Shown here: piece after piece, positions 52,428 through 53,337 of the stretch
How the letters are laid out: every line of letters starts with the position of its first letter
Numbering within the stretch: the first letter of the stretch is position 1
From: Zootoca vivipara
Lineage: Eukaryota
Assembly: GCF_963506605.1 (NCBI RefSeq)
Contig: NC_083277.1
Span: forward strand, 114,824,001-114,888,000
Direction of reading: 5' to 3'
Length of the DNA stretch: 64,000 nt
Translations under genes and position numbers: made by a program
Notes under the pieces: model-generated
Told to the model about the DNA's origin: nothing
The model's input: the letters and a program-made list of their open reading frames with translations, nothing else
Databases searched by the model: none

Positions 52428-53337
52428 TCCTATATAATAATGTCCAAGTTGTCCCTGCGTCCAGTTGTCCCGTGTGTCCCTGGGTTACTGCGCATGGGCC
52501 CCAGGGACACAGGGATTGGACAGCAGAGACGACGTACACACACACGCACACGCTCTCCCCCCCCACCCCTCTGCCAACTGCCGCTCCCGGCCGGACAAGC
52601 GCCTCAGTGTGCTTGCGCTAAAGAGCGAGGAGGAGGAGGAGGCTGCTTTAGCCCCCTTCCCCCCCTACGACCAGCAGACCAAGGGGCTCAGTACCTTGGA
52701 TGCCGGTCTGGTGGGACATGACGGCAAGCAGCCGCCAGGAACTGCCGCCTCTTGGGCCGGGGGCAAAGGCAGGAAGCGGCGCCGGGGAAAGAGAGCCGCA
52801 ACTCAGCGCCTCGCTTGCCTTCGCCCCGGCGGAGGCTCCTTCGGGCCAGGCAGCGGCGCCAGGACTTGGGCCGGAGACACCGGGGAAGCGGCAGAGACAC
52901 CGGGAAAGCGACAGAGTCACCGCTGCCATGTGCAGCTGAGGAGGCGGCGGGCTGAGGAGGGCGGCCCGGGCCGAGGCGGCGGGCGTCAAGCCGAGGGGGC
53001 CGCCGGGGAGGCCGCCTCGAGCTCCGGGCTCCTTCCTTCCTCCTCCTCCTCCTCCAGCAGCAGCAGCAGGAGCCGGCAGCTCCGGCCGCCGCTCGCGGCT
53101 CCTCACGGGCGTCGCCATAGCCTCTGGCTGGCTGCTGGAAGAGGAGGAGTAGGCTCGCTGGCCCTGGGATCCACCCACCGCCGCCTCCTTTCCGCCCCTT
53201 GGCTGCCTGAGCCCCGACACCTCTCCTTTTCCTAGCGGCGCCCATGGTGTCCTGGCCGAGGAGGTGGCGCCACGGCCCCGGCTTCTGCCGAGACACGCGC
53301 TCTAGCGCCCGTTTTTAAACGGGCTGAATTCCACTAG
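52428..53337 (+). mobile_element. Non-autonomous Helitron with captured CpG-island fragments
   Basis: 5' TCctatataataa; 3' hairpin gcccgttt/aaacgggc then CTAG; splits host sequence gatgca|ttttaaataaaag at A/T. Confidence 0.88.
52695..52719 (-). pseudogene. TWF1: Captured twinfilin-1 first coding exon (MSHQTGIQ + 1 nt)
   Basis: ATGTCCCACCAGACCGGCATCCAAG|gtactg matches the TWF1 N-terminus MSHQTGIQA, with splice donor and GC-rich upstream sequence. Confidence 0.85.

What the first reader, a model, noticed from the sequence alone, without database searches (positions are those of the whole stretch)
52428..53337. Helitron has captured the TWF1 first exon, splice donor and upstream CpG-island sequence
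Seen: canonical Helitron ends and a precise A|T insertion, confirmed by the intact host motif at ~53402-53421 and in the 31949-32200 copy. Inside, antisense to the element, lies an exact MSHQTGIQ-G|gt exon with ETS-type ggaag motifs upstream, and CpGs are largely undecayed. Known: promoter and exon capture by Helitrons is well described in maize and vesper bats and much less so in reptiles. Inference: a young mobile promoter + start codon + donor cassette that could create TWF1-headed chimeric transcripts, here pointing antisense toward MFSD5 and the 50.6-52 kb region.
Basis: partly seen in the sequence, partly recalled or inferred. Interest (0 to 1): 0.78.

Follow-up and report, generated by a model that had tools for sequence, protein, structure and literature searches.

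The report
Lizard Helitron carrying TWF1 gene start
A 910-base rolling-circle transposon (Helitron) sitting inside an older miniature transposon carries a copied, CpG-rich start of the actin-regulator gene TWF1 (leader, first eight codons, splice donor), a clean but ordinary case of a known habit of Helitrons, with no sign that this copy is expressed.

Summary
Observation confirmed. 52428-53337 (+) has every structural mark of a non-autonomous Helitron. It starts with TC and ends with CTAG, has a hairpin 13 nt before the 3' end, and sits exactly between A and T without target duplication inside a hAT-type MITE. Empty sites lie 71 bp downstream and at 32.0 kb. In a DNA run its two ends are present at thousands of copy-equivalents and its interior at roughly 20-50.

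On the minus strand the cargo reads ATG-MSHQTGIQ-G|GT (52719-52693) below about 570 bp of CpG-island-like DNA (CpG o/e 0.73 against 0.40 for the window). RNA contigs and reads match only 52694-52797, stop at the donor, and carry CpG where this copy has TpG or CpA. An expressed parent-like gene therefore exists elsewhere, and this copy has begun to decay.

No other twinfilin exon is in the window, which is the MFSD5-to-separase interval. No RNA read or listed splice joint comes from this copy, so the chimeric-transcript idea is unsupported here.

That the peptide is TWF1's start is recalled; I did not check it against a database. The parent locus itself could not be read.

The scan has already noted the same kind of event on other DNA of this genome (PPME1, DGCR6 and STBD1 cargoes). 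It is a new member of a known kind, of low to moderate interest.

The parts
52293..52300 (.). 8-bp target-site duplication of the host MITE (left copy)
   Evidence: The same 8 letters stand at 53532-53539. Loose ends of reads and contigs pile up at 52301 (table 7).
52301..52427 (+). Left part of the host hAT-type MITE, ending in the A of the insertion site
   Evidence: Aligns with the reverse complement of the copy at 31940-32215. Depth is about 1,000,000 in the DNA run X4, so the repeat is very high copy.
52428..53337 (+). Non-autonomous Helitron, 910 bp
   Evidence: TC start, CTAG end, 3' hairpin, A|T site without duplication. No other copy in the window. No Pfam family in its two longest ORFs.
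52428..52578 (+). Helitron 5' terminal module shared with the family. The right limit is approximate.
   Evidence: In X4, all-depth is 94,946 at 52497 and 3,660 at 52556, against about 12-24 for single-copy DNA. Loose ends stand at 52427 (126 RNA reads), 52521 and 52530. The TA-rich run is at 52431-52438. An inverted repeat lies at 52470-52484 / 52500-52514 (I8).
52579..52692 (-). Cargo: stub of intron 1 of the captured gene. The left limit is inferred.
   Evidence: DNA depth falls to about 800-970, the cargo level. The RNA contigs of X15 do not cover it: the bin mean of 56.5 is fully accounted for by 52694-52739.
52693..52694 (-). Splice donor GT
   Evidence: Read directly: AAG|GTACTG on the minus strand. 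The expressed contig ends at 52694, worked out from the from_end values (table 3).
52695..52719 (-). Coding part of the captured first exon: ATG + MSHQTGIQ + 1 base
   Evidence: It is the only exact occurrence of the peptide in the six frames of the window.
52720..52797 (-). Captured 5' leader, matched by expressed RNA from another copy
   Evidence: The X15 contig of depth 146.7 spans about 52694-52797 with 3 differences (52737, 52743, 52753). 6 of 6 X21 reads show the other letter at 52737 and at 52743.
52798..53290 (-). CpG-island-like upstream cargo, the putative promoter. Its origin was not tested.
   Evidence: GC 0.72-0.73 and CpG o/e 0.73-0.82. DNA depth 390-920, like the rest of the cargo. 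A contig of a second organism (X14) matches 53082-53263 with 1 difference in 182.
53291..53337 (+). Helitron 3' terminal module with hairpin (53307-53324) and CTAG (53334-53337)
   Evidence: X4 all-depth is 16,636 at 53329.
53338..53383 (+). 38 bp of host MITE after the site (53338-53375) plus an 8-bp filler (53376-53383)
   Evidence: family D1. Loose ends stand at 53384 in all four runs.
53384..53531 (+). Second copy of the 25 bp before the site, with the intact empty site 53408|53409, then the rest of the MITE
   Evidence: D1 copies 100% identical at a spacing of 71; D2.
53532..53539 (.). 8-bp target-site duplication of the host MITE (right copy)
   Evidence: Loose ends stand at 53531.

Best explanation
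A non-autonomous canonical Helitron was moved in trans by the transposase of an autonomous relative. At some point it picked up about 700 bp of genomic DNA from the 5' end of a twinfilin-1-type gene: CpG-rich upstream DNA, about 78 nt of leader, the 25-nt coding start, the donor, and about 115 nt of intron 1. The cargo lies between a roughly 150-bp 5' module and a roughly 47-bp 3' module, in antisense orientation. Because promoter-side and intron DNA are both present, the capture was from DNA, not from mRNA.

The cargo-bearing subfamily then multiplied to tens of copies. One copy landed between A and T inside a hAT-type MITE, about 4.5 kb downstream of the MFSD5 reading frame. At this locus it is most likely a silent passenger that is beginning to lose CpGs.

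Shown: the Helitron anatomy and precise insertion; multi-copy ends and cargo; the exon and donor; an expressed near-identical exon elsewhere.

Inferred: TWF1 as the parent; the contiguity of the upstream part with that gene; the way it was captured; silence at this locus.
For: - Anatomy and empty sites.
- No second copy in the window.
- Copy number in the DNA run X4. Single-copy contigs have depth 12.5-23.9 (records 17 and 18; the single contig at 51575; 22.5 left at 53820). The cargo bins have 390-970, the 5' end about 95,000 and the 3' end about 16,600.
- RNA. An X15 contig of depth 146.7 covers only about 52694-52797; the X15 depth in bins 52974-53207 is 0. In X21, 6 of 6 reads at 52737 and 6 of 6 at 52743 carry the other letter.
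- Direction of change. All 3 differences listed inside the cargo restore a CpG in the other versions.
- Exon structure. In the paralogue Twf2 the isoforms differ only before residue 9 and the gene has nine exons (PMC3158069, passages). That fits a first coding exon of 8 codons.
- Gene context. Pfam MFS_5 at 46511-47869 (2.1e-85), and a HAD hydrolase ORF at 56895-57590. Of seven recalled twinfilin motifs from later exons, 6 have no match and 1 has a lone two-substitution match on the other strand at 18498-18521.
- Literature. Capture biased towards gene 5' ends is reported in bats (PMC4224331, passages) and in Xenopus, 17 of 19 fragments (PMC12001565, passages). A TC...CTAG Helitron family with a similar TA-rich start and hairpin is reported in Lacerta and Zootoca.
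Against: - The real TWF1 locus of this species was never seen. That its protein starts with this peptide is recalled, and the peptide is in no paper of the held library (0 papers).
- The RNA match covers only 104 nt. The upstream 490 bp and the intron stub have no parent evidence.
- The variant letters seen in RNA stand in 2 DNA contigs of summed depth 57-72. That is about 3 copy-equivalents, so the expressed copy is not proven to be the parent gene.
- A low-depth X15 contig (record 12, depth 2.9, 52735-52945) carries this copy's letters at 52743 and 52753. It may be faint transcription of this copy or a sister copy, or DNA in that run.
- Only about 6 in 100 of one raw RNA run were read, and 44 of 59 joints and 847 loose ends were not shown.
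- The tool warns that summed depth is no copy number.
- Antisense cargo is the less usual orientation according to PMC12001565.
Confidence: 0.76

Rival explanations
1. The cassette works at this locus. The captured CpG island fires, and transcripts start near 52797 on the minus strand, use the donor at 52695 and splice into the 50.6-52 kb region, giving TWF1-headed chimeric or MFSD5-antisense RNA.
For: - ATG, donor and CpG-rich upstream DNA are intact.
- X15 record 12 (depth 2.9) carries this copy's letters over 52735-52945.
- Such transcripts are described for bat Helitrons (PMC4224331, passages).
Against: - 0 of 6 X21 reads at the diagnostic sites come from this copy.
- No listed joint leaves 52694/52695.
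- X21 depth is 0 in 5 of the 6 bins between 51570 and 52271, and 2.7 in the sixth.
- Record 12 runs about 150 nt above the leader's end, which does not look like a start at the promoter.
- The donor lacks the usual G at +5.
- No run that held the stretch in the index is on record as RNA.
Confidence: 0.07
2. The cargo is a mosaic. Only the leader, exon 1 and the intron stub come from the twinfilin gene. The CpG-rich 52798-53290 was picked up from another locus or in an earlier capture.
For: - RNA supports only 52694-52797.
- Stepwise captures are reported for bat Helitrons (PMC4224331).
- The upstream part holds simple GGA/GCA repeats and its own ATG-led ORFs.
Against: - DNA depth is even across the cargo, 390-970, as expected for one block that multiplied together.
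- No break in composition is seen.
- An untranscribed promoter is not expected to show in RNA in any case.
Confidence: 0.12
3. The peptide match is a coincidence, or the parent is another gene and not TWF1. Examples would be a twinfilin paralogue or pseudogene, or an unrelated gene with the same first eight residues.
For: - The identification rests on 8 residues and on recall.
- Pfam finds nothing in the element's ORFs.
- The protein search with the 190-aa ORF found nothing.
Against: - My rough estimate: a fixed M plus 7 residues has a chance of about 1e-9 per ATG. Even against some 20,000 gene starts and the 11 ATGs in the element, that gives about 1e-4.
- The exon ends after codon 8 plus 1 base, as in the twinfilin gene family.
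- RNA coverage stops exactly at that donor.
Confidence: 0.04
4. This is the true 5' end of TWF1 at its own locus, not a transposed copy.
For: A complete promoter-like region, ATG and donor are present.
Against: - The block is bounded by Helitron ends inside a MITE with empty sites.
- The cargo is multi-copy.
- No later twinfilin exon lies in the 52 kb downstream on that strand.
- The neighbours are MFSD5 and a HAD-type ORF.
- The expressed version differs at 3 sites.
Confidence: 0.01

Closest known systems
[quoted passage not shown]
   Same: The same kind of cargo, a gene's 5' end taken from genomic DNA with a stub of intron 1. It lies between canonical Helitron ends and has multiplied. A bias towards 5' ends is reported there.
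   Different: The host is a lizard and the parent gene is different. The copy number is lower: tens here, against about a thousand for NUBPL. No contribution to any transcript is shown here.
Heli1Xen1 Helitron family of Xenopus, also reported in Lacerta, Zootoca and a Darevskia species (PMC12001565, passages read)
   Same: TC start, CTAG end, a TA-rich run near the 5' end, and a hairpin of the CCCGTT...AACGGG type near the 3' end. In Xenopus 17 of 19 captured coding fragments come from gene 5' ends. The family is young in lacertids.
   Different: The paper's motifs are TATATAAA and CCCGTTA...TAACGGG; here they read TATATAAT and CCCGTTT...AAACGGG. No alignment to the family consensus was possible because the supplements are closed. 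The passages I read report gene capture for Xenopus only. The cargo here is antisense, whereas the paper reports a bias towards the element's own orientation.
Other cargo-bearing Helitrons noted by this scan in the same genome (PPME1, DGCR6, STBD1; notes s1-850069, s1-854797, s1-852034)
   Same: The same genome, the same class of element, and the same type of cargo (leader or first exon, CpG-rich). One of them also lies inside an old hAT miniature transposon. A copy number of 20-45 is quoted for one cargo.
   Different: A different parent gene. I did not see their sequences, so shared termini are not shown. These are AI notes, not checked here.

Membership tests
Helitron (canonical, Helitron1 type) | 5' end TC and 3' end CTRR | tested here: met
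   TC at 52428-52429 and CTAG at 53334-53337.
Helitron (canonical, Helitron1 type) | Short GC-rich hairpin about 10-20 nt before the 3' end | tested here: met
   A 7-bp stem, 53307-53313 / 53318-53324, lies 13 nt from the end. The energy is not remarkable on its own: 13 of 200 shuffles fold as well.
Helitron (canonical, Helitron1 type) | Insertion between host A and T, with no target-site duplication and no terminal inverted repeats | tested here: met
   Empty sites at 53408|53409 and in the 32.0-kb copy. 'Skips 910' joints in reads from other copies of the host repeat. No inverted repeat joins the two ends.
Helitron (canonical, Helitron1 type) | Ends shared by many dispersed copies, as evidence of mobility | tested here: met
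   In X4 depth is about 95,000 at 52497 and about 16,600 at 53329, against 12-24 for single-copy DNA. 126 RNA reads have varied loose ends at 52427.
Helitron (canonical, Helitron1 type) | Rep/helicase gene, required for an autonomous element | tested here: not met
   The element is only 910 bp, and its two longest ORFs have no Pfam family. It is therefore non-autonomous, which does not exclude membership.
Heli1Xen1 family (PMC12001565) | TA-rich motif in the left end and the CCCGTTA...TAACGGG hairpin in the right end | tested here: inconclusive
   Each motif differs at one position, and in the stem the change is a compensated pair. The paper says the ends differ between species.
Heli1Xen1 family (PMC12001565) | Sequence homology of the ends to the family's autonomous consensus | not testable with these tools
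   The consensus sequences are in supplementary data, which are closed. No lizard assembly is on hand.
Helitron gene capture (transduplication) | Host-derived segment lying between the element's own ends | tested here: met
   The depth profile separates the shared ends from a lower-copy interior. The interior holds the exon and donor.
Helitron gene capture (transduplication) | A parent locus elsewhere that matches the cargo beyond the coding piece | tested here: inconclusive
   Expressed RNA matches 104 nt (leader plus exon) with 3 differences and stops at the donor. The parent's DNA was not seen.
TWF1 gene proper | Later twinfilin exons downstream on the same strand | tested here: not met
   Of 7 recalled motifs from later exons, 6 have no match and 1 has a lone two-substitution match on the other strand. 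The motifs come from memory.
CpG-island promoter | Sequence criteria: GC above 0.55 and CpG o/e above 0.6 over more than 200 bp | tested here: met
   52501-53500 passes in three overlapping 500-bp windows.
CpG-island promoter | Transcription starting from it at this locus; an unmethylated state | tested here: inconclusive
   No copy-specific RNA was seen in one raw RNA run read at about 6 in 100, nor in one contig run. Methylation cannot be tested here.

The most novel reading that the evidence does not exclude
One young lacertid Helitron family has picked up the CpG-island 5' ends of many housekeeping genes, again and again. TWF1 is found here; the scan's notes list PPME1, DGCR6, STBD1 and several unnamed CpG-rich cargoes. 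Each capture runs from the promoter to a stub of intron 1 and can lie in either orientation. That would point to a capture step with a preference for open, promoter-proximal DNA. The published Xenopus work calls this 5' bias unexplained. It would also make this genome, with tens of near-identical copies per cargo, a natural test bed, in which some of the 20-50 TWF1 cassettes do head chimeric transcripts.
Probability: 0.15. Interest if true: 0.55.

Novelty: new member of a known kind. Interest (0 to 1): 0.25.

Why it matters
The finding shows that an apparent CpG island between MFSD5 and separase is transposon cargo, not a host promoter. That matters for annotation: such blocks can be mistaken for gene starts or seed false TWF1-like gene models. 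It also adds one more clean, datable case to a set of 5'-end captures in a lizard genome. With a whole-assembly survey, that set could help to explain why Helitrons favour gene 5' ends. Taken alone it changes nothing in what is known of Helitrons.

Tried and rejected
Second copies in the window. I looked for a second copy of the element with pattern searches allowing up to 3 mismatches and with a self-BLAST. Apart from the element's own match to itself, the BLAST gave only 6 short simple-repeat matches. The family therefore cannot be studied from the window.

Earlier notes of the scan. 'TWF1 twinfilin' and 'Heli1Xen1' are in no note. The search by sequence found nothing. 'Helitron' gave 48 notes, 8 of them shown.

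Protein evidence. Pfam finds no family in the two long ORFs of the element. The search for homologous proteins with the 190-aa minus-strand ORF collected 7670 candidates, none with E <= 0.001. Only proteins of about 105-332 aa were eligible, so this says nothing about longer models. The 8-residue peptide is too short for any database search offered here. A full-text search for it found 0 papers.

Literature. I found no paper on Helitron gene capture in squamates or on a Helitron with TWF1. I read listings only, except for passages of PMC12001565 and PMC4224331. The two papers holding both 'Helitron' and 'TWF1' are, by their titles, unrelated (a wasp genome and a cancer study).

Rejected readings:
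- Retrocopy origin of the cargo: the donor and an intron stub are present, and RNA stops at the donor.
- A TIR transposon: there are no terminal inverted repeats and no duplication.
- The true TWF1 locus.

Not resolved:
- Whether the insertion is fixed. The shares of 0.51-0.68 in 12 runs of organism A could come from sister copies. The second organism's run (X14) has depth 0 on the single-copy flanks.
- The exact copy number.
- The origin of the 71-bp duplication beside the element.

The supplements of PMC12001565 (consensus ends, Fig. S5) and of PMC4224331 are closed. They may bear on family membership.

Full report
WHAT IS THERE. The stretch 52428-53337 is a GC-rich block (GC 0.68) in a window of GC 0.47. 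Read on the plus strand, it begins TC followed by a TA-rich run and ends CTAG. A 7-bp GC-rich stem (53307-53313 / 53318-53324) ends 13 nt before the last base (the fold energy alone is unremarkable, since 13 of 200 shuffles do as well). No inverted repeat joins its two ends.

THE INSERTION SITE. The DNA on both sides belongs to one repeat, 52301-53531, flanked by the same 8 letters at 52293-52300 and 53532-53539. That is the mark of a hAT-type miniature transposon. A second copy lies at about 31949-32200 on the other strand. Aligned to it, the left flank ends and the right flank begins at adjacent bases, A then T, with nothing duplicated. The uninterrupted 42-nt host motif was found twice in the window, at 53385-53426 (0 mismatches) and at 32054-32095 (1 mismatch). 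In one search, reads and contigs from other copies of this very abundant repeat give a joint 52427->53338 that 'skips 910' exactly: 165 raw RNA reads from 82 start places, and 2 contigs.

THE ELEMENT IS A MEMBER OF A LARGE FAMILY. I laid four public runs on 50400-53900. In the DNA run X4, contigs that match single-copy parts have depths of 12.5 and 19.2 (records 17, 18), 23.9 (the one contig at 51575), and 22.5 (what is left at 53820). Against this, all-depth is 94,946 at 52497, 3,660 at 52556 and 16,636 at 53329. The bins of the interior (52623-53207) have 390-970.

The tool warns that summed depth is no copy number. The order of magnitude is nevertheless thousands of copies for the 5' end, about a thousand for the 3' end, and some 20-50 for the interior. 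Loose ends with varied letters pile up at 52427 (126 RNA reads), as expected where many insertions share a 5' boundary. Further loose ends at 52521 and 52530, together with the depth at 52556, place the end of the shared 5' module somewhere between 52557 and 52658. I put it near 52578, which is an inference. A run of a second organism (X14) holds the 5' end (52427-52530, 5 differences) and a 188-nt contig that matches 53082-53263 with 1 difference.

THE CARGO. On the minus strand the interior reads ATG (52719-52717), the codons for MSHQTGIQ, one further G (52695), and then GT (52694-52693). This is the only exact occurrence of that peptide in the six frames of the window. Above it lie about 570 bp with CpG o/e of 0.73-0.82. 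The whole element has 77 CpG and an o/e of 0.73, against 0.40 for the window.

GGAAG cores occur 6 times on both strands, against a shuffle mean of 1.39; 2 of 2000 shuffles reach 6. Three of them sit in GGA-type simple repeats, and no full CCGGAAG or CGGAAG site is present. I would not lean on them.

I could not check it with a tool, and the peptide is in no paper of the library. Two things support it indirectly. First, in the paralogue Twf2 the two isoforms differ only before residue 9, and the gene has nine exons (PMC3158069, passages), which fits a first coding exon of eight codons. Second, by a rough estimate of my own, a chance match of M plus seven residues to any of about 20,000 gene starts, over the 11 ATGs of the element, has a probability near 1e-4.

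DOES THE SIMILARITY GO BEYOND THE 25 CODING BASES? Partly shown. In X15, labelled as a guess at RNA, one contig of depth 146.7 differs from the window at 52737, 52743 and 52753. Its distances to its own ends (43, 49 and 44 letters) place it at about 52694-52797. The bin means (56.5 and 74.3) are what such a contig gives on its own. The intron side (52623-52693) and the bins 52974-53207 have no X15 depth. Such exon-restricted depth also argues that X15 really is RNA. In the raw RNA run X21, 6 of 6 reads at 52737 and 6 of 6 at 52743 show the same other letters.

So a near-identical exon, made of the coding start and about 78 nt of leader, is expressed from another copy, and its RNA ends at the donor seen here. 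At all three sites the other version has CpG where this copy has CpA or TpG. That is the direction expected if the expressed copy is the protected parent island and the Helitron copies are decaying. In DNA the variant letters stand in 2 contigs with summed depth 57-72 out of about 460-500, so they are a small minority of the copies.

What remains unshown is that the expressed copy is TWF1 itself, and that the intron stub and the upstream 490 bp come from the same locus. No lizard assembly is available to these tools.

IS IT THE REAL GENE? No. Seven recalled twinfilin motifs from later exons were sought in all six frames with up to two substitutions. Six had no match, and one had a lone two-substitution match on the plus strand at 18498-18521. 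Notes of the scan place the separase gene beyond that.

IS THE CASSETTE ACTIVE HERE? Nothing says so. No run that held the stretch in the index is on record as RNA. In X21, read at about 6 in 100, none of the 6 reads over the diagnostic sites carries this copy's letters. The bins between 51570 and 52271, where a spliced product would land, have depth 0 in 5 of 6 bins (2.7 in 51804-51920). None of the 15 listed joints leaves 52694/52695; 44 more joints and 847 loose ends were not shown.

One low-depth X15 contig (record 12, depth 2.9, 52735-52945) does carry this copy's letters at 52743 and 52753. It runs about 150 nt above the leader's end, which looks like read-through, a sister copy in someone's intron, or DNA, rather than a start at the promoter. 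The donor is AAG|GTACTG, without the usual G at +5.

HOW IT MOST LIKELY WORKS. This is a non-autonomous Helitron, moved by a relative's transposase, that picked up the gene start from genomic DNA; both promoter-side and intron DNA are present. It multiplied to tens of copies, and one copy landed in an A|T site of a MITE 4.5 kb downstream of the MFSD5 frame, where it sits silent and begins to lose CpGs. The step of capture itself cannot be read from one copy. The cargo lies between ends that are both shared with many other elements, so the 3' end of this element was not newly made at the capture.

COMPARISON WITH WHAT IS KNOWN. In vesper bats, Helitrons carry promoters, leaders, first exons and partial first introns more often than other gene parts, and such elements reach the highest copy numbers (PMC4224331, passages). 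In Xenopus laevis, 17 of 19 coding fragments captured by the Heli1Xen1 family come from gene 5' ends, and the authors call the bias unexplained. The same family occurs in Lacerta, Zootoca and a Darevskia species, with TC...CTAG ends, a TATATAAA run and a CCCGTTA...TAACGGG hairpin (PMC12001565, passages). The element here reads TATATAAT and CCCGTTT...AAACGGG. That is suggestive of the same family or a sister family, but it is not a test, since the consensus sequences are in closed supplements.

According to earlier notes of this scan, which are unchecked AI notes, this genome is a lacertid lizard's. Those notes also list Helitrons elsewhere in it with PPME1, DGCR6 and STBD1 gene starts. My searches found no paper on Helitron gene capture in squamates or on a TWF1 cargo (listings only).

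VERDICT. The capture reading is largely supported, with the parent's identity and the origin of the upstream part still open. The functional reading is unsupported at this locus. This is a new member of a known kind, and the scan has already met sister cases in this genome. Interest 0.25.

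Noticed in passing
window 53338-53446: Right after the Helitron the host MITE carries a 71-bp tandem duplication: 38 bp that follow the insertion site, an 8-bp filler, the 25 bp that precede the site, then the same 38 bp again. Both repeat pairs are 100% identical. A filled and an empty A|T site therefore stand side by side. One search lists one DNA contig (X4, depth 107.5) and 2 RNA reads with a 'goes back 72' joint 53440->53369. I read this as the duplicated form without the Helitron, existing somewhere: either in other MITE copies or as an empty allele. 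Which of the two is undecided.
   Followed up: partly
window 52293-53539: The host repeat is a miniature transposon of about 230 bp (without the insert), with an 8-bp target duplication and terminal inverted repeats of hAT type. Its depth is about 1-1.8 million in the DNA run, which makes it one of the commonest repeats of this genome, and it is abundant in RNA reads.
   Followed up: partly
window 54568-55566 (+): An uninterrupted 332-aa ORF with a Pfam Claudin_2 (PMP-22/EMP/MP20/claudin) match, E 1e-10. It lies between MFSD5 and the HAD-type ORF. I did not look into whether it is a known gene.
   Followed up: no
window 52016-52279 and 53676-53900: The apparently unique flanks next to the MITE have DNA contigs at depth 80-90 (records 21, 22) and 516 (record 24), against 12-24 further left. 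They are probably low- to middle-copy repeats themselves, so junction tests for this insertion must anchor further out.
   Followed up: no
The reads and contigs laid there carry letters other than the window's at every site listed there, with few or no reads showing the window's own letter. The RNA seen there therefore comes from other copies.
   Followed up: partly
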